From: Octopus sinensis
Taxonomy: Eukaryota
NCBI RefSeq assembly: GCF_006345805.1
Contig: NC_043006.1
Coordinates: 1,116,001 to 1,180,000, forward strand
DNA: 64,000 nucleotides
Reading direction: 5' to 3'
Below are positions 1 to 61,125 of the stretch, piece by piece. The notes beneath the pieces were generated by a model. The model had not been told where the DNA came from. It ran no database searches and worked only from the letters and a program-made list of their open reading frames with translations. Each line of letters starts with the position of its first letter. Positions within the stretch are counted from its first letter, which is position 1. The position numbers and the translations under genes are program-made.

Positions 1-780
1 GTGGTTGTGGTGTTGGTGGTTGTGGTGTTGGTGGAGGTGTTGGTGGAGATGTTGGTGGTGGTGTAGGTGGTGTTGGTGGTGGTGTTGGTTGTAGTTTTGG
101 TGGTTGTGGTGTTGTTGGTGGTTGTGTTGGTGGTAGTGTAGGTGGTGGTGTTGGTTGTAGTTTTGGTGGTTGTCGTGTTGTTGGTGGTTGTGGTGTTGGT
201 GGTTGTGGTGTTGGTGTTGTGGTGTTGGTGGTTGTGGTGTTGGTGGTTGTGGTGTTGGTGGTGGTGTAGGTGGTGTTGGTTGTGTTGTTGGTGGTTGTGG
301 TGTTGGTGCAGGTGTTGGTGGAGATGTTGGTGGTGGTTGTAGATTTGGTGGTTGTGTTGGTGGTAGTGTTGGTGGTGTTGTTGGTTAGTGATGTTGGAAG
401 TGGTACTGGTGGTGCTGGAGTTGTTGGGGTGGTGTTAGAGGTGGTGAGGTTCGTGGTGGTGATGCTAGTGGTAGTGGTGGTGACATTGTTGTTGTTGGTA
501 GTTGTGGTGGTGGTGGTGGTGTTGGTGGTGGTGGTGTTGGTGGTGGTGGTGGAGGTGGTGTTAGTGATGATGTTGATCGTGGTGTTGGTGTTTGTGGGGT
601 TGATGGTGTTGGTGGTGGTTGTGGTGGTAGTGTTTGTTATTTTGGTGTTGGCCGTGTTGTTGTTAGTGGTGGTGGTTTTGGTGGTAGTGGCGTTGTTGTT
701 GATTTGTTTCTTTCACAATTTCGGTGGTAGTAGTAGTGTGGTGGTGGAAGAGACGATTGGTGGTGGTGGTGTTGGAGATA
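1..780. repeat. (GGT/GTT)n low-complexity tract
   Basis: Continuous ggt/gtt/gta triplets; the overlapping V/G/W-rich ORFs are artefacts. Confidence 0.9.
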
Positions 781-1170: not shown

Positions 1171-1209
1171 ACATCCGTAGGCATCCCTTTATTTATTTCC
1201 TCCTGCATC

Positions 1210-1295
1210 GTCTACCTAGAGTCACATGGTCTACCTAGAGTCACATGGTCTACATTGGGTCACATGGTCTACATTGGGTCACATGGTCTACCTAG
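1210..1295. repeat. 19-bp tandem repeat, ~4.5 units
   Basis: Units GTCACATGGTCTACCTAGA and GTCACATGGTCTACATTGG. Confidence 0.9.
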
Positions 1296-1713
1296 GGTTG
1301 TATTATCATCACGTTTCGGACGACGAGCTATTGCTGATGTTGTAGTTGTTCTTTAGCCCCAGGCCGACCCTTCATGATGAAATAGACCTGTGAGGAAAAG
1401 CATTCCATCCATGACCAACACATCACGTTTTTAGGAATAGGGGTCGTTTCCTCCAAACAGTAATGTGAGAGTTGAGAACGACTCGGCTGCTGATTGTAGC
1501 GGGTCGAGCATTGGCGTTAGGTAAGGTATACTTTGCGGTAAGGCTGGTGGTGTTGGTGGGAATGGCCGTGGTGGTGATGGTGTAGTGGTGGTTGTGGTGG
1601 TGGCGTTAAGGTGATAACTGTGATGATGATGTTGTTTGTCATTGATGGTTTTGTTGGTAGTGATGATGATGACATCGATGCTGGTGGTGGTGGTGGTGGT
1701 GGCGGTGACGTAA

Positions 1714-8259: not shown

Positions 8260-8445
8260 TGTCTGTTTGTTTGTGCTTGTCAGTCCACCATCGCTTGACA
8301 ACAGATGCTGGTGTGCTTACGTCCCCGTAACTTAGTGGTTCAGCAAAGAGCCCGATAGAATAAGCACCAGTCTTGCAAAGAATAATTCCTGGGGTCGAGT
8401 TTTTCGACTAAAACCCTGTCAAATGAGTGAAACAAGTAAAAGAAT
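8260..8445 (+). mobile_element. CORE-like SINE (family B) 3' half
   Basis: gcttgacaacagatgctggtgtgcttacgtccccgtaacttag...gaaacaagtaaaag. Confidence 0.75.
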
Positions 8446-8494
8446 ATATATATATACCACACACACACACATATATATAGTATGTATATATATA

Positions 8495-8534
<40 letters not shown>

Positions 8535-8560
8535 TGTATGTATATGTATATATATGTATG

Positions 8561-11127
8561 ATTGATTGATTGATTGATTGATTCTAGTTTCAGCTTATGA
8601 GCTGTGGCCATGCTGGGGCACCGCCATTGGTGTGTTGCTACTTGGTTTCACTTCATGGAGGCTTTCTAGCAACTGCTATTTGGTGCATGAGAGAGTTCGA
8701 TGCAGCTGCCCTCATCTGCCCCTCCTGCCGTGAAGTTGGTTTCATCTGGGACACCTGACAGGAAGAGATCCAGCTTCATTTTAAAGACATCTGTATCCAC
8801 CCCATGCAGGTCTCTCAGGTTCTTCGGGAGGATATTGAAGAGCTGTGGGCCTCGGAAGCCCAGGCTATCACAGAATCTTGTCCTACATCTTGATGGCAGG
8901 TTTGGAGTCCTAGGCACCACGCAGTGGCGCCCAGTTCTGGCATTTGCGTAACTCTCGATGCCAAAGTTCAGGACACTTCCCTCCAGGATCTTCCAGATGT
9001 ATATTATGGCATATCTTTCCCGCCTACGCTCCAGGGAATATAATTTTAATCTCTTGAGTCTTTCCCAGTAGCTTACATTCTGCATAGAGGCTATCTTCTT
9101 TGTGTAGCTTCGTTGGATCGCCTCAAGTTCTGTGATCAACTTGACACTGGATGGTGACCATAGCTGAGAGCAATAGTCAAAGTGGCTTAGGACAAGTGTC
9201 TTCCAGAGGACCATCATGGTTTCTTGTTCTCTTGTTCTAAAGGTTCTAAGAATCCATCCAGCCAGCCGTCTACATTTCATTGTCAGTTTAGCAACATGTA
9301 CATGAAAGGTCGCGTCATCACTCATGTGAATACCCAGGTCACGCACTGATTGTGCCTCTGGGATTGCAATCCCTCCGGGTCCAGTGTATTCATTGGGTAT
9401 TGCATTCAGTTTTGCATGCTGATAGTATAAAGCTTGAAACTTTCCAGCATTGAACTGCATGCTATTGTTTTTTAGCCCACTTGTATATTCGTCCAGCTCA
9501 CATTGCAGGTGTTTAGTGTCCTCAGGGTTCTGTATTGCCTGTGAAACTTTTGTATCGTCTGCATAACTTGTGATCGTGGCTCTCTGCGTGGCTGAGGGCA
9601 TGTCTGAGAGGGCCATTATGAACAGTAGTGGTCCCAGAACAGTGCCCTGCGGAACACCGCTCACTATTTGTGTGTAATGGAGGTGGAGGTGGCCCCATTG
9701 GCTACTACCACCTGACTTCTATCCTTCAGAAAGTCATGAAGCCATTCTCCCAGTTTTCCAACTATGTTGAGATCACGCAGTTTGTGACATATCATTCCAT
9801 GATCGACTTTATCAAAGGCCTTTGCAAAGTCGAGATATATCACTTCCACATTTGAGTGGTTGAGCAGCCGTTTCAGCACCCAGTCATAGTGTTGTAGGAG
9901 CTGAGTTAAACAGCTTCTCCCTGGTCGGAAACCATGTTGGGTGTCGGGCAGCAAGTCATTCTCTTCAAGGAAGGTGATCAGCTTCCTTCTGACTATTCGT
10001 TCCATGACCTTGCTGATGTGTGAGGTCAGAGAGATAGGTCTATAGTTCTTGGCTTCCGCTCTGCTACATCCTTTATGAATGGGGCATATGTTACCTTCCT
10101 TCAGTTTTCCTGGAAGTTTGCCAGCTGCAAGGAAGCTCTGAAAGAGGAACTGCAGTGGTCTTGCTAGGACTCTCTTACATGCTTTTAGGAGGATTGCCGG
10201 GAATCCATCGGGGCCAGTAGCTGAGTCTGTTTTCATTTCATCTATAGCCTTGGTTACATCGTCTTCCTTTATATCGATGTAATCTATCGTCGCCGCCTCT
10301 GATTTTATATCTGCAGTGGTAAAAAGTCAGTTGGATTGGTGATTTGGAGATGCCCAGGGGGTGGAGTGAAAACACTCTTGAATTGCTCATTCAGTATTTC
10401 ACTTACCCTCATTGGTTTCCTGTAAGTGTGCCATCCTTTTCGAGGAGTGGCCCTATTCTACAGTGCACTGTAGCTGTTTCTTTGGCATACCTGTAGAAAG
10501 CTCTGGGGTTAGATTTTATGTTTTCTATAGCCCAGGCTTCTTTGTCTGCTTTCTTTTTTCATGGGAGAGTTGCAGACATTTTTCGATTTCCAACAGTTTT
10601 ATTTTAGGCGGGACTTTTCACTGCTTTCAATCTGTTTGTTTAGGCGATTTGAAAATTCGTACGCCGTCTCATTAAAATTTTCCTCTCTCTGGGGATTTTG
10701 TTCTTGTGTACAGGGCCTTTCTCTCTGGGACACATTTGTAGCATATGGCTTGCATTACAGACATGAATTGTTGAAGTTTCACGTCGATGTCTGGCGAGGA
10801 GAGACATTTAGGCCAGTTTGTTTGAGGATCTCTTTCTCAATTTGTTTCCAGTTTGCCTTATGGTAGTTCAAGCTGGAAAGATTTTGAGGGTTTCTTGTAG
10901 GCTGCATGTCCGTGCTCTCTTTTGGCCCGTACATGGTCAGCTCTATCATGTTGTGATCCGAGAGTAGTGTCGGTGTCACTTTCACATTATGGATGAGATC
11001 CATGTCATTTGTGAAGCAGAGATCCAGTGTGTTACCTGCCCTGGTTGGTTGGAGTATTACCTGCTCCATGTACAGGGTGTTGATGAGGTTCAGGAGGGAC
11101 CTCGCCTGTCCTCGTTCACATCTTGTC
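8561..11127 (-). mobile_element. 5'-truncated CR1-like LINE (end of endonuclease, RT, 3' tail)
   Basis: Frameshifted ORF2: QPTRAGNTLDLCFTN, GPDGFPA, NYRPISLTS, QHGFRPGRSC, YLDFAKAFDKVDH, SGVPQGTVLGP, YADD; 3' tail ggcggtgccccagcatggcc-hairpin-aaactagaat(caat)n. Confidence 0.95.
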
Positions 11128-14100
11128 ATCGTTCACATCTTGTCATCGTTCACATCTTGTCATCGTTCACATCTTGTCATCGTTCACATCTTGTCATCGT
11201 TCACATCTTGTCATCGTTCACATCTTGTCATCGTTCACATCTTGTCATCGTTCACATCTTGTCATCGTTCACATCTTGTCATCGTTCACATCTTGTCATC
11301 GTTCACATCTTGTCATCGTTCACATCTTGTCATCGTTCACATCTTGTCATCGTTCACATCTTGTCCTCGTTCACATCTTGTCATCGTTCACATCTTGTCA
11401 TCGTTCACATCTTGTCATCGTTCACATCTTGTCATCGTTCACATCTGTCATCGTTCAATCTTGTCATCGTTCACATCTTGTCCTCGTTCACATCTTGTCA
11501 TCGTTCACATCTTGTCATCGTCACATCTTGTCATCGTTCACATCTTGTCATCGTTCACATCTTGTCATCGTTCACATCTTGTCATCGTTCACATCTTGTC
11601 ATCGTTCACATCTTGTCATCGTTCACATCTTGTCATCGTTCACATCTTGTCATCGTCACATCTTGTCATCGTTCACATCTTGTCATCGTTCACATCTTGT
11701 CATCGTTCACATCTTGTCATCGTTCACATCTTGTCATCGTTCACATCTTGTCATCGTTCACATCTTGTCCTCGTTCACATCTTGTCATCGTTCACATCTT
11801 GTCATCGTTCACATTTGTCATCGTTCACATCTTGTCATCGTTCACATCTTGTCATCGTTCACATCTTGTCATCGTTCACATCTTGTCATCGTTCACATCT
11901 TGTCATCGTTCACATCTTGTCATCGTTCACATCTTGTCATCGTTCACATCTGTCATCGTTCACATCTTGTCATCGTTCACATCTTGTCATCGTTCACATC
12001 TTGTCATCGTTCACATCTTGTCATCGTCACATCTTGTCATCGTTCACACATCTTGTCATCGTTCACATCTTGTCATCGTTCACATCTTGTCATCGTTCAC
12101 ATCTTGTCATCGTTCACATCTTGTCATCGTTCACATCTTGTCATCGTTCACATCTTGTCATCGTTCACATCTTGTCATCGTTCACATCTTGTCATCGTTC
12201 ACATTGTCATCGTTCACATCTTGTCTCGTTCACATCTTGTCATCGTTCACATCTTGTCATCGTTCACATCTTGTCATCGTTCACATCTTGTCATCGTTCA
12301 CATCTTGTTCATCGTTCACATCTTGTCATCGTTCACATCTTGTCATCGTTCACATCTTGTCATCGTTCACATCTTGTCATCGTTCACATCTTGTCATCGT
12401 TCACATCTTGTCCTCGTTCACATCTTGTCATCGTTCACATCTTGTCATCGTTCACATCTTGTCATCGTTCACATCTTGTCATCGTTCACATCTTGTCATC
12501 GTTCACATCTTGTCCTCGTTCACATCTTGTCATCGTTCACATCTTGTCATCGTTCACATCTTGTCATCGTTCACATCTTGTCATCGTTCACATCTTGTCA
12601 TCGTTCACATCTTGTCATCGTTCACATCTTGTCATCGTTCACACATCTTGTCATCGTTCACATCTTGTCATCGTTCACATCTTGTCTCGTTCACATCTTG
12701 TCATCGTTCACATCTTGTCATCGTTCACATCTTGTCATCGTTCACATCTTGTCATCGTTCACATCTTGTCATCGTTCACTCTTGTCATCGTTCACATCTT
12801 GTCATCGTTCACATCTTGTCATCGTTCACATCTTGTCCTCGTTCACATCTTGTCATCGTTCACATCTTGTCCTCGTTCACATCTTGTCATCGTTCACATC
12901 TTGTCATCGTTCACATCTTGTCATCGTTCACATCTTGTCCTCGTTCACATCTTGTCCTCGTTCACATCTTGTCATCGTTCACATCTTGTCATCGTTCACA
13001 TCTTGTCATCGTTCACATCTTGTCATCGTTCACATCTTGTCATCGTTCACATCTTGTCATCGTTCACATCTTGTCATCGTTCACATCTTGTCATCGTTCA
13101 CATCTTGTCATCGTTCAATCTTGTCATCGTTCACATCTTGTCATCGTTCACATCTTGTCATCGTTCACATCTTGTCCTCGTTCACATCTTGTCATCGTTC
13201 ACATCTTGTCCTCGTTCACATCTTGTCATCGTTCACATCTTGTCATCGTTCACATCTTGTCATCGTTCACATCTTGTCATCGTTCACATCTTGTCATCGT
13301 TCACATCTTGTCATCGTTCACATCTTGTCCTCGTTCACATCTTGTCATCGTTCACATCTTGTCATCGTTCACATCTTGTCATCGTTCACATCTTGTCATC
13401 GTTCACATCTTGTCATCGTTCACATCTTGTCCTCGTTCACATCTTGTCATCGTTCACATCTTGTCATCGTTCACATCTTGTCCTCGTTCACATCTTGTCA
13501 TCGTTCACATCTTGTCATCGTTCACATCTTGTCATCGTTCACATCTTGTCATCGTTCACATCTTGTCCTCGTTCACATCTTGTCATCGTTCACATCTTGT
13601 CATCGTTCACATCCTTGTCATCGTTCACATCTTGTCATCGTTCACATCTTGTCATCGTTCACATCTTGTCATCGTTCACATCTTGTCCTCGTTCACATCT
13701 TGTCATCGTTCACATCTTGTCATCGTTCACATCTTGTCATCGTTCACATCTTGTCATCGTTCACATCTTGTCATCGTTCACATCTTGTCCTCGTTCACAT
13801 CTTGTCATCGTTCACATCTTGTCATCGTTCACATCTTGTCATCGTTCACATCTTGTCATCGTTCACATCTGTCATCGTTCACATCTTGTCCTCGTTCACA
13901 TCTTGTCATCGTTCACATCTTGTCATCGTTCACATCTTGTCATCGTTCACATCTTGTCATCGTTCACATCTTGTCATCGTTCACATCTTGTCCTCGTTCA
14001 CATCTTGTCATCGTTCACATCTTGTCATCGTTCACATCTTGTCATCGTTCACATCTTGTCATCGTTCACATCTTGTCATCGTTCACATCTTGTCCTCGTT

Positions 14101-14872
14101 CACATCTTGTCATCGTCACATCTTGTCATCGTTCACAATCTTGTCATCGTTCACATCTTGTCATCGTTCACATCTTGTCATCGTTCACATCTTGTCATCG
14201 TTCACATCTTGTCCTCGTTCACATCTTGTCATCGTTCACATCTTGTCATCGTTCACATCTTGTCATCGTTCACATCTTGTCATCGTTCACATCTTGTCAT
14301 CGTTCACATCTTGTCCTCGTTCACATCTTGTCATCGTTCACATCTTGTCATCGTTCACATCTTGTCATCGTTCACATCTTGTCATCGTTCACATCTTGTC
14401 ATCGTTCACATCTTGTCATCGTTCACATCTTGTCCTCGTTCACATCTTGTCATCGTTCACATCTTGTCATCGTTCACATCTTGTCATCGTTCACATCTTG
14501 TCATCGTTCACATCTTGTCATCGTTCACATCTTGTCCTCGTTCACATCTTGTCATCGTTCACATCTTGTCATCGTTCACATCTTGTCATCGTTCACATCT
14601 TGTCATCGTTCACATCTTGTCATCGTTCACATCTTGTCCTCGTTCACATCTTGTCATCGTTCACATCTTGTCATCGTTCACATCTGTCATCGTTCACATC
14701 TTGTCATCGTTCACATTTGTCATCGTTCACATCTGTCATCGTTCACATCTTGTCCTCGTTCACATCTTGTCATCGTTCACATCTTGTCATCGTTCACATC
14801 TTGTCATCGTTCACATCTTGTCATCGTTCACATCTTGTCATCGTTCACATCTTGTCATCGTTCACATCTTGT
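11107..14872. repeat. 17-bp satellite array (TGTCATCGTTCACATCT)n, ~221 units
   Basis: Near-homogeneous 3.76-kb tandem array with ~27 TGTCCTC variant units and scattered 1-2 bp indels. Confidence 0.98.
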
Positions 14873-14889
14873 ATATAAATTTTTTTTGC

Positions 14890-15290
14890 TTTTACTTGTT
14901 TCAATCATTTAACTGCGGCCGAGAAGTGTTTTTTTTTTTAGTCGAACAAATCGACCCCAGGAATTATTTTTCTTTGAAGTCAAGAATTTAGTCTATCGTT
15001 CTCTCTGCCGAACATGACGGGGACATAAACACGCCAGCACCGGTTGTCAAGTAGTGGGAGGGGTGGGGTGAAATATAGACACAAATGCATGCACACACAC
15101 ACATACACACACATATATATATATATATATACGACGGGTTTCTTCCAGTTTTTCGTCTACCAGTACCACTCACAAGGCTTTGGTCGGCCCGAGGCTATAG
15201 TAGAAGACACTTGCTCAAGGTGCTGTGCAGTGGAACAGAACCCGGAACTATGTGGTTGGGAAGCAAGCTTCTTACCACACAGCCACAGCT
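14890..15290 (-). mobile_element. CORE-like SINE (family B), near full length
   Basis: rc has tggctgtgtggtaag A-box, ttccgggttc B-box, caccttgagcaagtgtcttctactatagcc core and ggccgcagttaaatgattgaaac tail. Confidence 0.85.
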
Positions 15291-15394
15291 GATTATGTGT
15301 ATATCTAGATAGACCTCTACGCCCTCGCGATTGCAAGTACACGTAGACGCGCACACACTCTCATATAATCTATGTCTATATATAAATACATAAG

Positions 15395-15555
15395 CATATT
15401 GCTATGTTGTAAAAAAATTGCTTCCCAACCATTTTGTTCAGGGTTCAGTCCCACTGCGTGACATCTTAGGCAAATATCTTCTGCAATAATCTTGGGCACA
15501 CCAGAGCTTTGCGAGTTGATTTGGTAGGCGGAAACTGAAAGAAGCCCGTCCCATA
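15395..15555 (-). mobile_element. CORE-like SINE 5' half
   Basis: rc of gggttcagtcccactgcgtgacatcttaggcaaatatcttc region. Confidence 0.7.
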
Positions 15556-15612
15556 TATAAATATATATATATGTAATGTGTGTGCGTGCATGTATGTGTG
15601 TGTTTGTGTTCG

Positions 15613-34649: not shown

Positions 34650-35264
34650 GGCGGCGAGCTGGCAGAAACGTTAGCTCACCGGGCGAAATGCGTAACCGTA
34701 TTTCGTCTGCTGTTACGTTCTGAGTTCAAATTCCGCCGAGGTCGACTTTGCCTTTCATCCTTTCGCAGTCGATTAAATAAGTACCAGTTACGCACTGGGG
34801 GTCGATACAATCGACTTAATACCTATGTCTGTCCTTGTTTGTCTCTCCTTTTTTGTCCTCTCTGTGTTTAGCCCTTTGTGGGTAGTAAAGAAATAGGTAT
34901 TTCACCTGCCGTTACGTTCTGAGTTCAAATTCCGCCGAGGTCGACTTTGCCTTTCATCCTTTCGCAGTCGATTAAATAAGTACCAGTTACGCACTGGAGG
35001 TCGATACAATCGACTTAATCCGTTTGTCTGTCCTTGTTTGTCCTCTCAGTGTTTAGCCCTTTGTGGGTAGTAAAGAAATAGGTATTTTGTCTGCCATTAC
35101 GTTCTGAGTTCAAATTCCGCCGAGGTCAACTTTGCTTTTCATCCTTTCGGGTTCGATAAATTAAGTACCAGTTACGCACTGGTGTCGAAATAATCGACTT
35201 AATCCCTTTGTCTGTCTTTGTTTGTCCCCTCTATGTTTAGCCCCTTGTGGGCAATAAAGAAACA
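34650..35264 (+). mobile_element. SINE family A head-to-tail trimer with 15-bp TSD
   Basis: One full unit plus two headless units; TSD AGAAGAATAACGAAG at 34633-34647 and 35265-35279. Confidence 0.9.
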
Positions 35265-36048: not shown

Positions 36049-36643
36049 CTTTTCTACTCTAGGCTCAAGGCCTGAAATTTTGGATGAAGGGTGCAGTCGA
36101 TTACATCGTCCCCGGAACGCAACTGGTACTTAATTTATCGAACCCGAATGGATGAAAGGCAAAGGCGACCTCAGTGGAATTTGAACTCAGAACGTAGCGG
36201 CAGACGAAATACCTATTTCTTTACTACCCACAAGGGGCTAAACACAGAGAGGACAAATAAGGAGAGAAAAACGGATTAAGTCGATTACATCGACCCCAGT
36301 GCGTAACTGGTACTTAATTTATCGACCCCGAAAGGATGAAAGGCAAAGGCGACCTCAGCGGAATTTGAACTCCGAATGTAAAGAGTAAAGACAGACGAAA
36401 TACCTATTTCTTTACTGCCCACAAGGGGTTAAACATAGAGGGGACAAACAAGGACAGACAAAGGGATTAAGTCGATTGTATCGACCCCAGTGCGTAACTG
36501 GTACTTGTTTAATCGACTGCGAAAGGATGAAAGGCAAAGTCGACCTCGGCGGAATTTGAACTAAGAACGTAACGGCAGACGAAATACCATAAAGCATTTC
36601 ACCCGTCGTGCTAACGATTCTGCCAGCTCGCCGCCCTTCTGAT
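36049..36643 (-). mobile_element. SINE family A trimer (3'-most unit has an alternative tail)
   Basis: Junctions cagacgaaatac|ctatttc at ~36212 and ~36403; probable 12-bp TSD atctataRtatt at 36037-36048 and 36644-36655. Confidence 0.85.
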
Positions 36644-37234
36644 ATCTATAGTATTGCTATCACAAAGGCCTGCGTACTCTTTTGTGTTTATTATCAATAA
36701 CGATATCCGACATCACGATTTATTTATGCTAACTGGTAGGTAGAATCAGTGAACTGAAATAAATTCTAATTGATTATTTAGAGTAGTCGTTTTTAACCTG
36801 GGGGTGTCAGTAATTTCCAGTGGAGGTGGTGGGGGGGTGAGCCCTTCAGAAAAAACAGGAATTTCTCTAATTATGTTTGTTATTCTCTTAACGAGGGCAT
36901 GGTCAAATAATGAGAAGTTTATGAAAAAATGCAAAAGTACCTCGCCTTATACCTTTAGTTTTCTTATTCTATCATAGTGCCACTTACCATTTTCTGTACT
37001 TAATGACCTCCCCCACCCGCTTCCTATCCCTCAAAGCCCTCACTAATTCTGATTTGTACCGTTAACATTTGCCTTTATTTTGTAATTTTTTTTTGTTACA
37101 AGACTCATCTTGAGATGCACCGGTACAAAGCTTCAATTTTTTTTTTTTCAGAACTTTTTACTCTAAGCGTTCTAACTTGGACCGTGACATTACCTTACGT
37201 TAAATCTATAGTACACTATTTCATAAAAATATAC

Positions 37235-37379
<145 letters not shown>

Positions 37380-37431
37380 TATATATATGTAATATATATA
37401 TATATACATACATATATACATATATATATAC

Positions 37432-37767: not shown

Positions 37768-37797
<30 letters not shown>

Positions 37798-37799
<2 letters not shown>

Positions 37800-40700
37800 C
37801 CTTAAATCCTTAATCCTTAAAAATGTTTTAGCCCGAAGGCCGCGGCCATGCTGGGGCACCACCGCTGAATGAGCTACACTAGTTTGTGAATCCTCCTCTG
37901 ATACGTGGCACTTGATCAACAAGGGAGTTCGATGCTGCTGCCCGCATCCATGTCTCCTGTCGTGAGGTAGTTTCATCTGGGACTCCCAACAAGAAGAGAT
38001 CCAGTTTAGTTTTAAAGAAACCCACATCCACACGATGTAAGTCTCTCAGGCATTTAGGGAGGATGTTAAAGAGCTGTGGTCCTCTGAAACCCAAGCTGTT
38101 GCAGTATCTGGACCTGTATTTTGATGGTGATGTTGGAATCCTTGCACCACACGCAGCGGCGCCCGTTCTGCGGTTGGAGTAACTTTGAATGCCAAAGTTT
38201 GGACAAGACCCTCCAGGATTTTCCAGATGTATATATATCACTGCATATCTCTCCCCTCCGCTCCAGGAGAAGAGGTTTAATACCTTCAGTCTTTCCCAGT
38301 AGCTGACATTTTGCATTGAGACAATTTTCTTTGTGTAGCTTCTCTAAGTTGCTTCGAGTTCTGCTGTTTGTTTTATATTGTGTGGTGACCAAAGTTGGGA
38401 GCAGTAGTCCAAGCGGCTGAGGACGAATGTTTTCCATAGGACCATCAGTGTCTCCTTCTCTCTTGTTCTGAAAGTTCGGAGAATCCATCCAGCTAGCCGT
38501 CTGCATTTTATCACCAGATTAGCAATATGCATTTGGAAAGATGCATCATTGCTCATGTCAATGCCCAGGTCACGCACTGATTTTGACTCAGGGATTGCAA
38601 TTCTTCCTGGGCCAGTGTATCCAGTCTTCACGTCATTTACCTTTGTGTGCCAGTAGCGCAGGGCCTGGAACTTACCTGCATTAAACTGCATGTTGTTGTC
38701 CTCAGCCCTACCTGTATATTGTGTCCAGCTCATGTTGCAGATGCGCAATATTTTCAGGGTTTTGTATTGCGTGGGAGACTTTGTGTCATCTGCATAGCTA
38801 GCAAGGGTGGTCATCGTAGCAACTGAAGGCATGTCTGAAAGGGCCACTATGAACATCAGTGGCCCCAAGACAGTGCCCTGTGGGACACCGCTTGTTATTT
38901 GCGTTTCCTTGGAGGTGGCTCCATTGCTCACAACTGCCTGTTTTCTGTCTTTTAGGAAGTTGTGCAGCCACTCTCCAAGTTTCCCGCCTATGCCGAGACC
39001 ACGCAGTTTGTGACAGATCATACCATGGTCGACTTTATCAAAGGCTTTTGCAAAGTCGAGATATATTACATCCACATTTGAGCCATTTAGTAGCTGTTTC
39101 AACACCCAGTCATAGTGTTGCAGGAGCTGTGTTAGGCAGCCTCTACCTGGTCGAAATCCATGCTGGGTGTCAGACAGTAAGTCATTTTCTTCAAGGAACA
39201 TGATTAGTTTCTTACGGACTATTCGTTCCATGACTTTGCTGATGTGTGAGGTCAGAGAGATAGGCCTATAATTTTTAGCATCTGCTCTGCTACCTCCCTT
39301 ATGGATAGGGCATATTACCCCCTCTTTCAGTTTGACTGGGAGCTTACCACTTGCAAGAAAGCTCTGAAAAAGAAGCTGTAGCGGTTTTGCAAGGGCTCGT
39401 TTGCACGATTTGAGAAGGATCGCTGGGAATCCATCAGGTCCAGCAGCTGAGTTTGTGTCAATCTCATCAATGGCTAGTAGTGATATCATCTTCTTCGATG
39501 TTGATGTACTCAATTTTTGTCTCTTTGGCCGCTGGTAAAGTGGCAAAGAATTCTTCTGTGTTGTTTACTTGCCTGTGTCCTAGAGGTGTAGTGAACACAC
39601 TTTGGAACTGTTCGTTCAGTATTTCACTTATCCTCGTGGGATTTCCTGTGAGAGAGCCATCTTTTTGGAAGAGAGGTCCTATTCTCTGGTGCACTGTGGC
39701 TGTCTCTTTGGCAAACTTAAAGAAAGCTTTAGGGTTTGATTTATATTTTCTATTACCCAAGCTTCTTTATCTGCTCTCTCTCTCCTTTTCATGGGACTGA
39801 TGTAGACTTTTTTCAGTTTCCATTAGCATTCTTTCGAGCCGAGACTTCTCACCACTTTTGGTGTGCTTGCTCAGGCGGTTTGCAATCCTTGTCCGTCGTC
39901 TCATAAGAATCCTCCTTTCTCTAGGGATCCTGTTTTTGTTCTTGTGTGTGCTGGCCCTGCACATTGGGACATATTTGTCACATATGGCTTGTATTATGGA
40001 CATGAAGTGTTTTGTGTTTCATGTTTATGTCCGGTGTGGAGAGACATTCAGGCCAATCCTGTTTGAGGATCTCTTTCTCAATCGACTTCCAGTTGGCTTT
40101 ATGAAAGTTTAAGTTGGAGAGATGGTGGGTGCTTCGTATAGGCTGTGTGTCTGCGGGGGCTTTTGTTCCATACATAGACAGCTCTATTATGTTGTGATCC
40201 GAGATCATTGTCGGCATCACATTAACATTATGGATAATATCCATATTGTTTGTGAAGCAGAGATCCAGTATATTATCTGCCCTTGTTGGTTGCAGAACTA
40301 TTTGCTCCATGAAAGAGGCATTTGTGAGATGGAGCAGGGACTCCACCTGTGCCTGCTGATGGTGTGTCATCCCTGGGAGCATCTGCCCCCCAGGCCATTC
40401 CACATTGGGGAGGTTAAAGTCACCCATGAAGAATACACTGTTGTGCTGTTCAAGGTTGGTGAGGACTTCTCCTATTTTTGTTAGGCAGTCTTCAAACATG
40501 TCTGAGTGTTTTGGGGCATCTGGTGGGCGATATGTAGTGCATATGACGATATTCAGTTGTCTTATGTGTACAATTTGAGTTTCACATACTGAGTTTGAAT
40601 ATGACAGCAGGACCTGGGGCGTGAGGTCATCTCGGATGTACATTGCAACTCCAAAATGGCTCCTCTCTTTTCTATCTGTGCGTATGACTGCATATTGCGG

Positions 40701-41545
40701 CATGTGTATTTCTGCATCACCTATATCGGGTTCAAGATGCGTTTCTGTGAGTGCCATGCATATAGCTCGATTGCATGTCACAAGGTCTCTCAGGAATGAA
40801 ATTTTCTTTTTACAGTTTCCGCGCAGCAGCCCTCCTACATTCAGTAGAAATATTTTTGTGGTGTGTGTGTTGGTGTTGGTGTCTGTGGTGGCAATCCTGC
40901 ATCTGTTGGTGGTGGCCTTATGTGGTGGTAGTTCCAGCTTTGTGCTTGTAGCCAGGTCAGCTGCTGAACAATTTTTTCTGCCATGCACAAAAAAGACTGC
41001 TGTTCAGCTGCCGCCCTTCTCACATCTGGGTGAAGCTGGCCACCTGTTGGGTTTCCGCGCACCACATCTGCATACCGTCTTTCAGTAGTGGTCAGTGCGA
41101 TTTTTTCCCTTCTTTTAACTTTTTCTTTTTGTTTTTGTTTTTGTTCTCCCTGAGGGAGGGACTTCTGTCTCGCGTCCGTGCGGTTTCGGTAGGGCCTCCG
41201 ATGTGCAAAGCGACAGTTTGCACCTTCAACGCCGTACCAGCAGTCCCACCTCAGGTAGAATTTGCAGGTGCTTCTTTCCCTGCCCTTACAGTTTTTGCTG
41301 GGGTCCCTCTGTTTTCTCTGGACAGGGCTTCCTTTAGCCTTGATTCTGTCACCCTTTACCTCCTGCTTCCCATCAATTCCAGGGTGCCTTTCCTTTCTTG
41401 TGGCCATCGCACCTCTTTGGTCTTCAGTTGTGGTGTTGGAAGCTGGACATGTGTCATCGTTTCCCTGTGTTCCAGGCTTCTCCATTTGGCTCTGGATGCT
41501 TTCCTCATCCTTTTGGCCCTCCCTGCTGCCGTCACCTCCCATATA
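37798..41545 (-). mobile_element. near-complete CR1-like LINE (ORF1 + APE + RT + 3' tail), flanked by (TA)n
   Basis: APE: LLNVGGL, LTETHL, YRPPD, MGDFN, DLCFTN, SDHN. RT: YLDFAKAFDKVDH, YADD. Tail ggtggtgccccagcatggccgcggccttcgggctaaaac(ttaagga)n; several frameshifts. Confidence 0.95.
40841..41542 (-). pseudogene. LINE ORF1 remnant with CCCH zinc finger
   Basis: CKFYLRWDCWYGVEGANCRFAH (C-x7-C-x8-C-x3-H) at 41201-41266 in a basic, K/R-rich open frame directly upstream of the endonuclease. Confidence 0.75.
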
Positions 41546-41547
41546 TG

Positions 41548-41613
<66 letters not shown>

Positions 41614-41620
41614 AATATAT

Positions 41621-41684
<64 letters not shown>

Positions 41685-41965
41685 ATATATATATTTGTAT
41701 GTATGTATGTATGTATGTATGTTACGTATGTATGTGTATGCACATACATATAATGTATATGTGACCATGCGTGCTGCTATGCTTGGATTGTTTGAGCTTG
41801 AATGCGTGTGCCTGCAACGTGGTTGTGTGAGACAGAAGAAATAAATAGGGAAAGAAAGAGAGTGAATAAATGTGTGTTTCATTCTGTGTTTCATTCTGTG
41901 TTTTTTCACTGGTATCGATGAAGGTATAAGCAAAGTCATATTATTGTAGGAACTAACTGGCGACG

Positions 41966-43678: not shown

Positions 43679-43719
<41 letters not shown>

Positions 43720-43722
<3 letters not shown>

Positions 43723-44563
43723 CAGCTGATGCATTTTGGAAGAAATTCCTCACTAAAACAGCCATACTCTCTTCCTTCGCTCACAGCCTCTAACAATATC
43801 AGAGACCTGGGTGTAATTGTTGATGACGATCTCAGTTGGAGTGCACACATCAACAAGAAGGTCGATATAACTCGTAGGATGAGTTCCTGGATCTTAAGAA
43901 CTTTCCGGTCCAGAGAATAAGATGTCATCATACCACATTTCTCCTCCTTTGTACGGCCACACCTCGAATACTGCTGCCCACTGTGGTCTCCCCATATAAG
44001 ACAAAACATCTCGAGGATTGAATCACCCCAGAGAGCACTCAGTAAACGTATTGAAGGCACGGCTGCTCTCGATTATTGGGATCGCCTTAAAGCCTTGAAA
44101 CTCTACTCTCTCCAGCGTCGCCGTGAGCGGTACATCATTTGTACGATGTGGAGAATATACCGCCAACTTTGCCCAAACGACCTGAACATTAGCTTCTAGG
44201 TTCGTCCAAGACTGGAACCACGGGCCATACGTCCCCTGCCCAATTCAAGATCACAGGATACATGTACACTGCAACATAATTTCTTTTCCTCAACAGGCCC
44301 TGCCCTATTTAACATCGTCCCGAAAAAGATCGAAGAGGAACAGGATCCCATCAACTTTAAACGGAGTCTGGATAGATTCCTTCAAGAAATACCAGATAAG
44401 CCACCCATAATTGGATACAACTCACCCAACAACTCACTACTTGAATGGACCATAAACAAAACTTGACTTAAACAGGATTCATATAATCCTATCAGGTGGT
44501 GCTATTAAGTTAGACATGGCCTGGACCAATCGTTGGTCGAAACATATCTAAGTTTTATCTAAG
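43720..44563 (+). mobile_element. 3' fragment of a second CR1-like LINE family, in (TA)n
   Basis: RDLGVIVDDDLSWSAHI, VRPHLEYCCPLWSP, LKLYSLQRRRERY; tail ggtggtgc..catggcc-hairpin-gaaac(atatctaag..). Confidence 0.9.
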
Positions 44564-60708: not shown

Positions 60709-61125
60709 GGCGGCGAGCTGGCAGAAACTGTAGCACGCCGGGCGAAATGCGTAGCCGTATTTCGTCTGCTGTTACGTTCTGAGTTCAAATTCCGCCGAGG
60801 TCGACTATGCCGTTCATCCTTTCGGGGTCGATAAATTAAGTACCAGTTACGCACTGGGGTAGATATCATCGATTTCATCCTTTTGTCTGTCCTTGTTTGT
60901 CCCCTCTGTGTTTAGCCCCTTGTGGGTAGTAAAGAAATAGGTATTTCGTCTGTCGTTACGTTCTGAGTTCAAATTCCGCCGAGGTCGACTTTGCCTTTCA
61001 TCCTTTCGGGGTCAATAAATTAAGTACCAGTTACGCACTGGGGTCAATATAATCGACTTAATCCGTTTGTCTGTCCTTGTTTGTCCCTTCTGTGTTTAGC
61101 CCTTGTGGGCAATAAAGAAATCCTA
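60709..61125 (+). mobile_element. SINE family A dimer with 16-bp TSD
   Basis: Junction aaagaaatag|gtatttcgtc at 60940/60941; TSD ATTTCTATGCGGTTGT at 60691-60706 and 61126-61141. Confidence 0.9.

What the first reader, a model, noticed from the sequence alone, without database searches (positions are those of the whole stretch)
11090..14872. 3.8-kb satellite made from the last 17 nt of a truncated LINE, with variants fitting reiterative (telomerase-like) reverse transcription
Seen: the array starts exactly where the CR1-like LINE is 5'-truncated. Its unit (rc ATGACAAGATGTGAACG) continues the endonuclease frame (MTRCERGQARSLL), which aligns with GMTHHQQAQVESLL in the intact paralog at ~40340-40375, so the unit is LINE ORF2 sequence. 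The LINE-proximal sequence TGTCCTCGTTCACATCTTGTCAT has TGTC-C-T and TGTC-A-T 17 nt apart. Only two unit types recur: TGTCATC (majority) and TGTCCTC (~27 copies). Inference: these are the products expected if a cDNA end repeatedly realigns on one fixed template, giving the C variant after TGTC and the A variant after TGTCAT with one mismatch. That would be repeat addition by a LINE RT at a truncation point, creating a satellite in one event. Alternatives are DNA-level slippage/unequal exchange seeded by the same microhomology, or an assembly artefact.
Basis: partly seen in the sequence, partly recalled or inferred. Interest (0 to 1): 0.8.

Follow-up and report, generated by a model that had tools for sequence, protein, structure and literature searches.

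The report
LINE-end 17-bp minisatellite, DNA-level expansion
A 3.8-kb run of about 222 copies of a 17-base unit really is built from the last 17 bases of a cut-short jumping gene (a LINE) in an octopod genome, but the regular pattern of its variants points to ordinary DNA-level repeat expansion, not one telomerase-like burst of reverse transcription.

Summary
A period-17 array (TRF 11107-14872, 222 copies, 97% match) directly abuts a 5'-truncated APE-type LINE on the minus strand (8559-11129). An intact relative, 89% identical in DNA (L002/P0004), reads GGA|ATGACGCGATACGAACA|AGGGCAGG (G-MTRYEQ-GQ) where this copy has the unit ATGACAAGATGTGAACG (MTRCER). Homology starts exactly at 11129, so the unit is the LINE's terminal 17 nt. 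TGTCCT (11107-11112) and TGTCAT (11124-11129) lie 17 nt apart.

The 'one RT event' reading is not supported. The 26 C-variant units are not scattered. 15 of 25 C-to-C intervals are 6 or 7 units (3.0 expected; 0 of 200,000 permutations reach 15), with 11 in a row in the distal 1.5 kb. That is a 102/119-bp higher-order repeat, the mark of block amplification by unequal exchange or slippage. Apart from the A/C site the array has no substitution variants, whereas the LINE body is decayed.

The best reading is a LINE-derived minisatellite seeded between short direct repeats (Haber-Louis model) and expanded at DNA level. What made the first duplication at the junction is unresolved: an RT switch, an end-joining polymerase or replication slippage. 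This is an ordinary kind of repeat and of low to moderate interest.

The parts
11113..14874 (-). 17-bp tandem array, about 221-222 units. The + strand unit is CGTTCACATCTTGTCAT; in LINE sense it is ATGACAAGATGTGAACG. The first unit (11113-11129) is also the LINE's own 5'-terminal 17 nt.
   Evidence: TRF (11107-14872, period 17, 222.2 copies, 97%); unit census; pattern search.
8559..11129 (-). 5'-truncated, decayed APE-type LINE. It keeps the endonuclease C-terminal part, the RT and the 3' UTR, and ends in an (AATC)n tail at 8559-8583. Truncation is at 11129.
   Evidence: ORFs; tblastn; 74% nt identity to the paralog; 89.9% to L002, with about 15 indels and one premature stop; RVT_1 in Pfam; tail read.
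11107..11112 (+). LINE-internal TGTCCT, the proximal copy of the short direct repeat that flanks the progenitor unit.
   Evidence: Sequence read.
11124..11129 (+). TGTCAT at the very 5' end of the truncated LINE, the distal copy of the short direct repeat (5 of 6 match, 17 nt from the first).
   Evidence: Sequence read; in L002 the two sites are not alike.
13315..14756 (+). Higher-order-repeat zone in which C-variant units recur every 6-7 units (102/119 bp).
   Evidence: 15 of 25 C-C intervals are 6 or 7 units (3.0 expected), longest run 11, 0 of 200,000 permutations.
14859..14874 (+). Terminal unit CGTTCACATCTTGT-AT: a canonical unit minus one C, or a 14-nt partial unit followed by flank.
   Evidence: Sequence read; unit parse.
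14875..15320 (-). Flanking tRNA-derived-type SINE copy (SINE2). Its A/T-rich 3' tail (..TGAAACAAGTAAAAGCAAAAAAAATTTATAT) abuts the far end of the array.
8294..8442 (+). Flanking SINE copy (SINE1, 3' part). Its tail is followed by (AT)n/(AC)n microsatellites up to the LINE's 3' tail. The LINE plus array therefore sits between two SINEs arranged tail to tail.
40354..40370 (-). Single-copy site homologous to the unit in the near-full-length paralogous LINE in the same window (ATGACACACCATCAGCA, 9 of 17 identical, no array).

Best explanation
This is a LINE-derived minisatellite. A LINE of a stringent-type family, which is the partner of the local SINE, inserted into AT-rich microsatellite DNA and was 5'-truncated inside its endonuclease domain at ATGACA... 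Its last 17 nt were bracketed by a 5-of-6 direct repeat (TGTCCT...TGTCAT).

Misalignment between these two short repeats produced the first tandem duplication, as in the Haber-Louis model of minisatellite birth. The misalignment could have been replication slippage, unequal sister-chromatid exchange, or microhomology-mediated repair synthesis. The array then grew to about 222 units by further DNA-level slippage and unequal exchange, much of it in blocks of 6-7 units.

Shown here: the LINE origin of the unit, its position at the truncation point, the microhomology, the higher-order periodicity, and the lack of substitution variants. Inferred: the enzyme that made the first duplication, the order of events, and that the 1-bp indel variants are largely long-read consensus noise.
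For: (1) The unit is LINE sequence and is terminal. The L002 alignment starts at 11129 with 12 of 17 identities, in frame, and nothing LINE-like lies beyond the array.
(2) Short direct repeats flank the progenitor unit, the defining feature of the Haber-Louis model as summarised in PMC6947457.
(3) The array has higher-order structure. C units fall at 6-7-unit intervals: 15 of 25 intervals against 3.0 expected, a run of 11, 0 of 200,000 permutations. The label motif 'x a a C a C a a a' also occurs twice, 20 units apart.
(4) 3.77 kb of array carries no substitution variant other than A/C. The adjoining LINE differs from its closest relative at 257 sites, has one premature stop, and shows an excess of non-synonymous changes on its own branch (48 non-synonymous/56 synonymous versus 34/54), giving a rough 1% neutral decay. 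About 30 substitutions would be expected in an equally old array that had not turned over.
(5) In this family RT-made repeats are short: 3' tails of 3-6 units, (AATC)5 and (AAGGATT)3.
(6) The unit has no hairpin potential, so no special structure is needed or implied.
Against: - The unit coincides exactly with the LINE's truncation point. Post-insertion slippage gives no reason for that, which hints at a link to how the 5' junction was formed. Against this, there is a look-elsewhere effect, because the locus was picked for being striking.
- A homology-driven first slip within TGTC would give the C type, yet the A type dominates (173 versus 26). That requires either a mismatch-tolerant first event or later drift and amplification.
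- There are no population, read-level or cross-species data for this locus.
- The roughly 1% age estimate rests on one relative and one outgroup.
- The array's indel density (22 in 3.77 kb) equals the LINE's (about 15 in 2.55 kb). If those indels are real, the two could be of equal age.
Confidence: 0.62

Rival explanations
1. Hybrid origin. The first one or few duplications were made during integration at the 5' junction. Either the LINE RT realigned the cDNA end (..TGTCAT) on the internal TGTCCT of a 5'-truncated RNA, or an end-joining polymerase made iterative microhomology-primed templated synthesis while the junction was sealed. The bulk of the array then grew later at DNA level.
For: The unit is exactly the terminal 17 nt, and the array probably ends in phase at the far junction. 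The microhomology sits at the cDNA end. LINEs of this stringent, tail-repeat type are known to slip on their 3' repeats in a reaction described as 'reminiscent of telomere elongation' (UnaL2, PMC1636434). This family has such tails and a SINE partner.
Against: Nothing in the sequence separates an RT slip from a DNA-polymerase slip. The known RT slippage is on 4-7-nt 3' repeats at initiation, not on 17 nt at an RNA 5' end. Two related near-full-length loci in Argonauta hians show no junction arrays, though that comparison is uninformative.
Confidence: 0.2
2. All of the roughly 222 units were added in one retrotransposition event by telomerase-like repeat addition of the LINE RT on one fixed template, with A and C variants set by where the cDNA end realigned.
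For: The unit is terminal LINE sequence. Only A and C substitution types occur, and both can be derived from TGTC/TGTCAT realignment.
Against: - The C units are periodic (6-7 units), not independently placed.
- The array is free of substitutions while the LINE is decayed.
- The model needs about 221 successive 17-nt translocations on 4-6 nt of pairing, by an RT whose own tail repeats stop at 3-6 short units.
- The same variants follow from DNA slippage.
Confidence: 0.03
3. The array arose inside a longer (less truncated) LINE copy by ordinary slippage. A later deletion, with one breakpoint in the array, removed the upstream LINE, so that the apparent truncation at the array is secondary.
For: Arrays are deletion-prone. 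The far end can also be read as a 14-nt partial unit joined to flank. This reading removes the coincidence of unit and truncation point.
Against: It needs an extra event. 5' truncation at insertion is the norm for LINEs. The far flank is a SINE tail and AT-rich DNA like the 3' flank, as expected for an original insertion boundary. The end phase lies within 0-3 nt of the homology boundary.
Confidence: 0.1
4. Assembly artefact. The array's length or its internal pattern is a product of long-read assembly or consensus, for example an over-expanded or mis-collapsed repeat.
For: All 22 odd units are 1-2-bp indels. They tend to be adjacent (5 adjacent pairs, P about 0.04), and one adjacent pair compensates in length (units 178-179: 16 + 18 nt). 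The indel density is the same as in the LINE body relative to its relative, about 0.6%.
Against: A regular A/C substitution pattern is not an error signature. Both junctions read cleanly into unique sequence. Indel noise affects the copy count, not the existence of the array.
Confidence: 0.05

Closest known systems
Minisatellite birth by slippage or unequal exchange between short flanking direct repeats (Haber & Louis 1998, as summarised in PMC6947457), and TE-derived minisatellites in general
   Same: The unit is a unique progenitor sequence inside a transposable element. It is bracketed by a 6-bp direct repeat (5 of 6 match) one period apart. The result is a head-to-tail array with higher-order structure that indicates later unequal exchange.
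   Different: The progenitor unit is exactly the 5'-terminal 17 nt of a truncated LINE rather than an internal segment. The flanking repeat is imperfect, and the variant carrying the distal repeat's base (A) dominates.
Template slippage of stringent-type LINE RTs on their 3' tail repeats (UnaL2 (UGUAA)n, PMC1636434)
   Same: The LINE family here has a conserved 3' end shared with a SINE and short tandem-repeat tails that differ between copies.
   Different: The known reaction occurs at initiation, on 4-7-nt units at the RNA 3' end, and yields a few copies. Here the units are 17 nt, at the 5' truncation end, in about 222 copies with higher-order periodicity.
Telomerase and telomere-maintaining retroelements (repeat addition on a fixed template)
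   Same: A short unit is repeated many times, and in principle it could be templated by one RNA segment with realignment on a few nucleotides.
   Different: There is no dedicated template or anchor, no chromosome end, and no evidence of recurrence at other loci. The variant arrangement contradicts cycle-by-cycle addition.
Satellite DNAs derived from transposable elements (reviews PMC6947457, PMC9659126)
   Same: Tandem amplification of a fragment of a TE.
   Different: Known only as a single 3.8-kb locus with a 17-bp unit, which is minisatellite scale. No evidence of genome-wide abundance could be obtained with these tools.

Membership tests
TE-derived minisatellite (Haber-Louis type origin) | Head-to-tail tandem array with a unit of about 10-100 bp | tested here: met
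   TRF gives period 17, 222 copies, 97% match; unit census.
TE-derived minisatellite (Haber-Louis type origin) | The unit is homologous to a single-copy progenitor segment of a TE | tested here: met
   L002 (89% identical intact LINE) matches the unit at 12 of 17 nt, in frame, single copy. The paralog (9 of 17) and L001 (10 of 17) are also single copy.
TE-derived minisatellite (Haber-Louis type origin) | Very short direct repeats (about 5-10 bp) flank the progenitor unit, one period apart | tested here: met
   TGTCCT at 11107-11112 and TGTCAT at 11124-11129, 17 nt apart: 5 of 6 match, with 4 perfect plus the final T. Model quoted from PMC6947457.
TE-derived minisatellite (Haber-Louis type origin) | Signs of expansion by unequal exchange or multi-unit slippage (higher-order repeats) | tested here: met
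   15 of 25 C-C intervals are 6 or 7 units, run of 11, 0 of 200,000 permutations.
TE-derived minisatellite (Haber-Louis type origin) | Length polymorphism between alleles or individuals | not testable with these tools
   No reads, second haplotype or conspecific assembly are reachable by DNA search.
Telomerase-like reiterative reverse transcription product | The unit corresponds to the template end, with realignment microhomology | tested here: met
   The unit is the terminal 17 nt of the truncated LINE, and TGTC(C/A)T lies one period apart. DNA slippage predicts the same.
Telomerase-like reiterative reverse transcription product | Variants are set cycle by cycle on one fixed template, so no multi-unit periodicity | tested here: not met
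   C variants are periodic at 6-7 units.
Telomerase-like reiterative reverse transcription product | Recurrence: other truncated copies of the family end in arrays of their own terminal k-mer | tested here: inconclusive
   Only two related genomic loci could be fetched (A. hians L003 and L004). Both are near full length and have no junction arrays. The paralog in the window is near full length.
Telomerase-like reiterative reverse transcription product | The RT is shown to have repeat-addition processivity on such a template | not testable with these tools
   The only support is by analogy with 3'-tail slippage in UnaL2 (PMC1636434).
Genome-wide satellite DNA | Many loci or large arrays of the same unit | tested here: inconclusive
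   There is one locus in the window. The array's translated peptide has no hit among 5.8 billion proteins. The 23-mer is absent from the metagenome and prokaryote-genome contig collections. None of these collections is a proper search space for a cephalopod genome.
Stringent-type (CR1/L2-like) APE LINE | APE-type endonuclease plus RT in ORF2 | tested here: met
   P0004 has Exo_endo_phos_2, Exo_endo_phos and RVT_1; the truncated copy has RVT_1.
Stringent-type (CR1/L2-like) APE LINE | Conserved 3' end shared with a partner SINE, and a short tandem-repeat tail instead of poly(A) | tested here: met
   GGCGGTGC(C/T)CCAGCATGGCC..TGAAAC.AG is shared by the LINE copies and four SINE copies. Tails are (AATC)5 and (AAGGATT)3.
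Stringent-type (CR1/L2-like) APE LINE | Placement in the CR1 clade by RT phylogeny | not tested
No reference clade set is available here.

The most novel reading that the evidence does not exclude
The first tandem copies were made during retrotransposition itself, at the moment the 5' junction was formed. The LINE RT (or the polymerase sealing the junction) reached the end of a 5'-truncated RNA or cDNA and re-primed on the TGTCCT microhomology 17 nt back. LINE 5' truncation points would then be birthplaces of minisatellites, and ordinary DNA-level exchange only inflated the array afterwards.
Probability: 0.15. Interest if true: 0.7.

Novelty: new member of a known kind. Interest (0 to 1): 0.3.

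Why it matters
If the DNA-level reading is right, this is a clean, datable textbook example of how a transposable-element fragment turns into a minisatellite. The progenitor sequence, the flanking microhomology and the higher-order repeats are all still visible, which makes it useful as an illustration and as a marker locus in an octopod genome, but it is not new biology.

It would matter more if terminal k-mer duplications proved to be enriched at LINE 5' junctions genome-wide. That would tie repeat birth to the poorly understood last step of target-primed reverse transcription. That question is directly testable on the whole assembly but not with this window.

Tried and rejected
- Searching for the array elsewhere. 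The translated array peptide had no hit. The 23-mer TGTCMTCGTTCACATCTTGTCAT had none in the metagenome and prokaryote-genome contig collections. These collections do not cover cephalopod genomes, and the word-indexed protein search is lossy: one search missed P0004, which one search found. These negatives therefore weigh little.
- A short-query protein search with the 116-aa junction ORF gave only three fragments at 69% identity or less. A concatenated 632-aa query was needed to find the 87%-identical P0004.
- Testing recurrence at other copies. The two Argonauta hians loci are near-full-length elements without junction arrays, so they say nothing about truncated copies.
- A target-site duplication around LINE plus array. 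Both flanks are AT microsatellite or SINE tails, so any 'ATAT' duplication is uninformative. I dropped this.
- Hairpin-driven slippage. Neither strand of the unit folds better than shuffles. Rejected.
- A pre-existing satellite into which the LINE inserted. The 17-mer is absent on the LINE's 3' side and the unit is LINE sequence. Rejected.
- An internal repeat of the LINE family. Three relatives carry the segment once. Rejected.
- ARAGORN found no tRNA-like heads in the SINEs, so their 'tRNA-derived' nature rests on my reading of the sequence only.
Full report
**What is there.** Reading 10400-15600 and running Tandem Repeats Finder on the window show one uninterrupted period-17 array at 11107-14872, with 222.2 copies, 97% matches and 1% indels.
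- In the phase CGTTCACATCTTGTCAT there are 173 canonical units, 26 units ending ..TGTCCT (the C variant) and 22 units with 1-2-bp indels.
- Six of the indel types recur 2-5 times. No other substitution variant exists.
- The 17-mer is confined to this locus within the window: 207 matches at up to 3 mismatches, all in the array, against 0.45 expected.
- The last unit reads CGTTCACATCTTGT-AT followed by ATAAATTTTTTTTGC (14859-14874). This is a canonical unit lacking one C, so the array most likely ends in phase.

**The unit is LINE sequence, and it is terminal.** The minus strand from 8559 to 11129 is a decayed non-LTR element.
- Its ORF fragments at 8666-9664, 9664-10236 and 10779-11129 match the RT and the C-terminal part of the endonuclease of a near-full-length paralog at 37969-40988(-). 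DNA identity is 74%.
- tblastn with the paralog's endonuclease starts at its residue 207 at window 11129. No endonuclease N-terminal sequence lies beyond the array.
- A 632-aa concatenated query found P0004, an intact 1033-aa ORF2 on a Logan contig (L002), 87% identical in protein and 89% in DNA over 2558 bp.
- The blastn alignment to L002 begins exactly at 11129. L002 reads ..CCCAGGA|ATGACGCGATACGAACA|AGGGCAGGTGAAT.. (PG-MTRYEQ-GQVN). The window reads ..GTGAACG|ATGACAAGATGTGAACG|AGGACAGGCGAGG.. (MTRCER-GQAR).
- That is 12 of 17 identities with no indel, the frame is kept, and 4 of the 5 differences are transitions.
- Upstream of ATG the array unit (GTGAACG) no longer matches the LINE (CCCAGGA).
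- Two more distant relatives (the paralog and L001) also carry the segment once.

Pfam confirms Exo_endo_phos_2 and RVT_1. The best named hits are Argonauta hians proteins, so the host is an octopod cephalopod. The CR1 clade label was not tested.

**Microhomology.** TGTCCT (11107-11112, LINE interior) and TGTCAT (11124-11129, LINE terminus) lie 17 nt apart. In L002 the same two positions read TGCCCT and CGTCAT. The 5-of-6 repeat therefore exists only in this copy's lineage, created by two synonymous transitions.

**Context.**
- The LINE's 3' end, GGCGGTGCCCCAGCATGGCCACAGCTCATAAGCTGAAACTAG, is followed by (AATC)5 and then (AT)n.
- The same 3' block is shared with the abundant SINE of this window, and the paralog ends in (AAGGATT)3. 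This is a stringent-type LINE/SINE pair with short tandem-repeat tails.
- LINE plus array lies between two SINE copies arranged tail to tail (8294-8442 on the plus strand, 14875-15320 on the minus strand) in AT-rich microsatellite DNA.
- This fits a single insertion whose boundaries enclose the array. No informative target-site duplication can be called in such sequence.

**How the array grew.** The arrangement of the variants is the key result.
- The C units are not scattered. From 13315 to 14740 they start at steps of 102, 51, 85, 120, 102, 101, 102, 102, 119, 102, 119, 102, 102 and 116 bp.
- Over the whole array, 15 of 25 C-to-C intervals are 6 or 7 units, where 3.0 are expected. The longest run is 11. 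None of 200,000 permutations reaches either value, and the result survives scanning all pairs of adjacent interval lengths.
- The label motif 'x a a C a C a a a' also occurs twice, 20 units apart.
- This is a higher-order repeat, the signature of duplication in multi-unit blocks by unequal exchange or multi-unit slippage of DNA.
- A reverse transcriptase recopying one fixed 17-nt template and choosing a realignment point at each cycle has no way to count to six.

**Age.**
- The truncated LINE differs from L002 at 257 of 2549 aligned sites, has about 15 indel events and has one premature stop.
- With the paralog as outgroup, its own branch carries 104 substitutions (56 synonymous, 48 non-synonymous) against 88 (54, 34) on the intact L002 branch.
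- The non-synonymous excess translates, very roughly, to about 1% neutral decay since insertion.
- An equally old 3.77-kb array that had not turned over should then hold some 30 substitutions. It holds none outside the A/C site. The array as it stands is therefore younger than the insertion or has been homogenised, and either way by DNA-level turnover.
- The 22 indel units cluster: 5 adjacent pairs (P about 0.04), one of which compensates in length. Their density (0.6%) equals that of the LINE body. I read them mainly as long-read consensus noise, but that is inference.

**Mechanism.** The anatomy matches the classical model of minisatellite birth. Very short direct repeats flank a motif, a first duplication arises by slippage or unequal exchange, and amplification follows by further slippage, conversion and unequal crossing-over (Haber & Louis 1998, as summarised in PMC6947457).
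A misalignment resolved within TGTC gives the C junction; one that retains the distal end gives the A junction.
- The unit has no hairpin potential.
- I commit to DNA-level expansion of a LINE-terminal 17-mer as the origin of essentially all of the array (confidence about 0.6 for the full scenario).

**What remains open.** The array's unit is exactly the terminal 17 nt of the truncated LINE, and post-insertion slippage has no reason to choose the terminus.
- Part of this is a look-elsewhere effect. Genomes hold many minisatellites and many TE boundaries, and this locus was selected for being striking.
- A mechanistic link to junction formation is nevertheless possible for the first duplication only. 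It could be an RT template realignment, or iterative microhomology-primed synthesis by an end-joining polymerase. The second idea comes from general knowledge of alternative end joining and was not tested.
- Telomerase-like slippage is documented for stringent-type LINE RTs, but on short 3' tail repeats at initiation (UnaL2, PMC1636434). In this family the tails stop at 3-6 units.
- I give the hybrid origin about 0.2, the pure one-event RT model about 0.03, an internal array followed by deletion about 0.1, and assembly artefact about 0.05.

**Limits.** No tool here searches cephalopod genomes by DNA. The negative searches and the two near-full-length A. hians loci are therefore weak evidence. 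Single-locus status, polymorphism, read support and recurrence at other truncated copies all remain to be tested on the full assembly.

**Verdict.** This is a new member of a known kind, a TE-derived minisatellite, of modest interest.

Noticed in passing
window 8555-8660(-), 37790-37900(-), and SINE 3' ends at 8442(+), 17998(+), 59984(+), 30455(+), 42656(-), 14889(-): The LINE family and the abundant SINE of this window share about 45 nt at their 3' ends (GGCGGTGC(C/T)CCAGCATGGCC..TGAAAC.AG). This indicates a stringent-type LINE/SINE partner pair. Tail repeats differ between copies: (AATC)5, (AAGGATT)3, and GTAAAAG-like or A-rich tails.
   Followed up: partly
window 34698-35262, 36095-36588, 60757-61121: A second SINE-like element (GTATTTCGTCTGCCGTTACGTTCTGAGTTCAAATTCCGCCGAGGTCGAC...) occurs as short tandem arrays of period 184-191 bp (2-3 copies, 85-91% match) at three separate places. 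This is a recurring head-to-tail arrangement.
   Followed up: no
window 37229-37430, 37771-37799, 41541-41760, 43681-43720, 8471-8559: Every LINE copy in the window has (AT)n microsatellite next to at least one end. The paralog has it at both ends, the truncated copy after its tail, and the third RT fragment (43720-44445, plus strand) at its 5' edge. This suggests insertion into, or a target preference for, TA-repeat DNA.
   Followed up: no
P0002: An 85-aa protein labelled 'hypothetical protein, partial [Escherichia coli]', from a 257-bp contig, is 67% identical to this octopod LINE endonuclease. It is most likely eukaryotic contamination in a bacterial assembly.
   Followed up: no
window 8560-11129 and 11113-14874: 1-bp indels occur at the same density (about 0.6%) in the array (22 units) and in the LINE body relative to its intact relative (about 15 events, mostly single-base deletions). 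This hints at residual long-read consensus errors in the assembly, which would inflate apparent frameshifts in annotated genes.
   Followed up: partly
window 1206-1298: A small 19-bp minisatellite (about 4.9 copies, CATGGTCTACCTAGGGTCA) has two variant types arranged in blocks (..cctagag.. twice, ..cattggg.. twice, then ..cctaggg..). This is another young minisatellite in an unremarkable context.
   Followed up: no
window 1-690, 856-1129, 2354-2572: Unusually long imperfect trinucleotide arrays lie at the start of the window: (GTG)n about 230 copies, (ACC)n about 91 copies, and (TGA)n about 74 copies. Whether they are coding low-complexity sequence or plain microsatellite was not examined.
   Followed up: no
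L003 3822-5428 (Argonauta hians BAAFZT010000002.1): A 38-39-bp minisatellite of about 42 copies (88-91% match) lies about 2 kb upstream of a related near-full-length LINE. It is not derived from the LINE terminus as far as checked.
   Followed up: no
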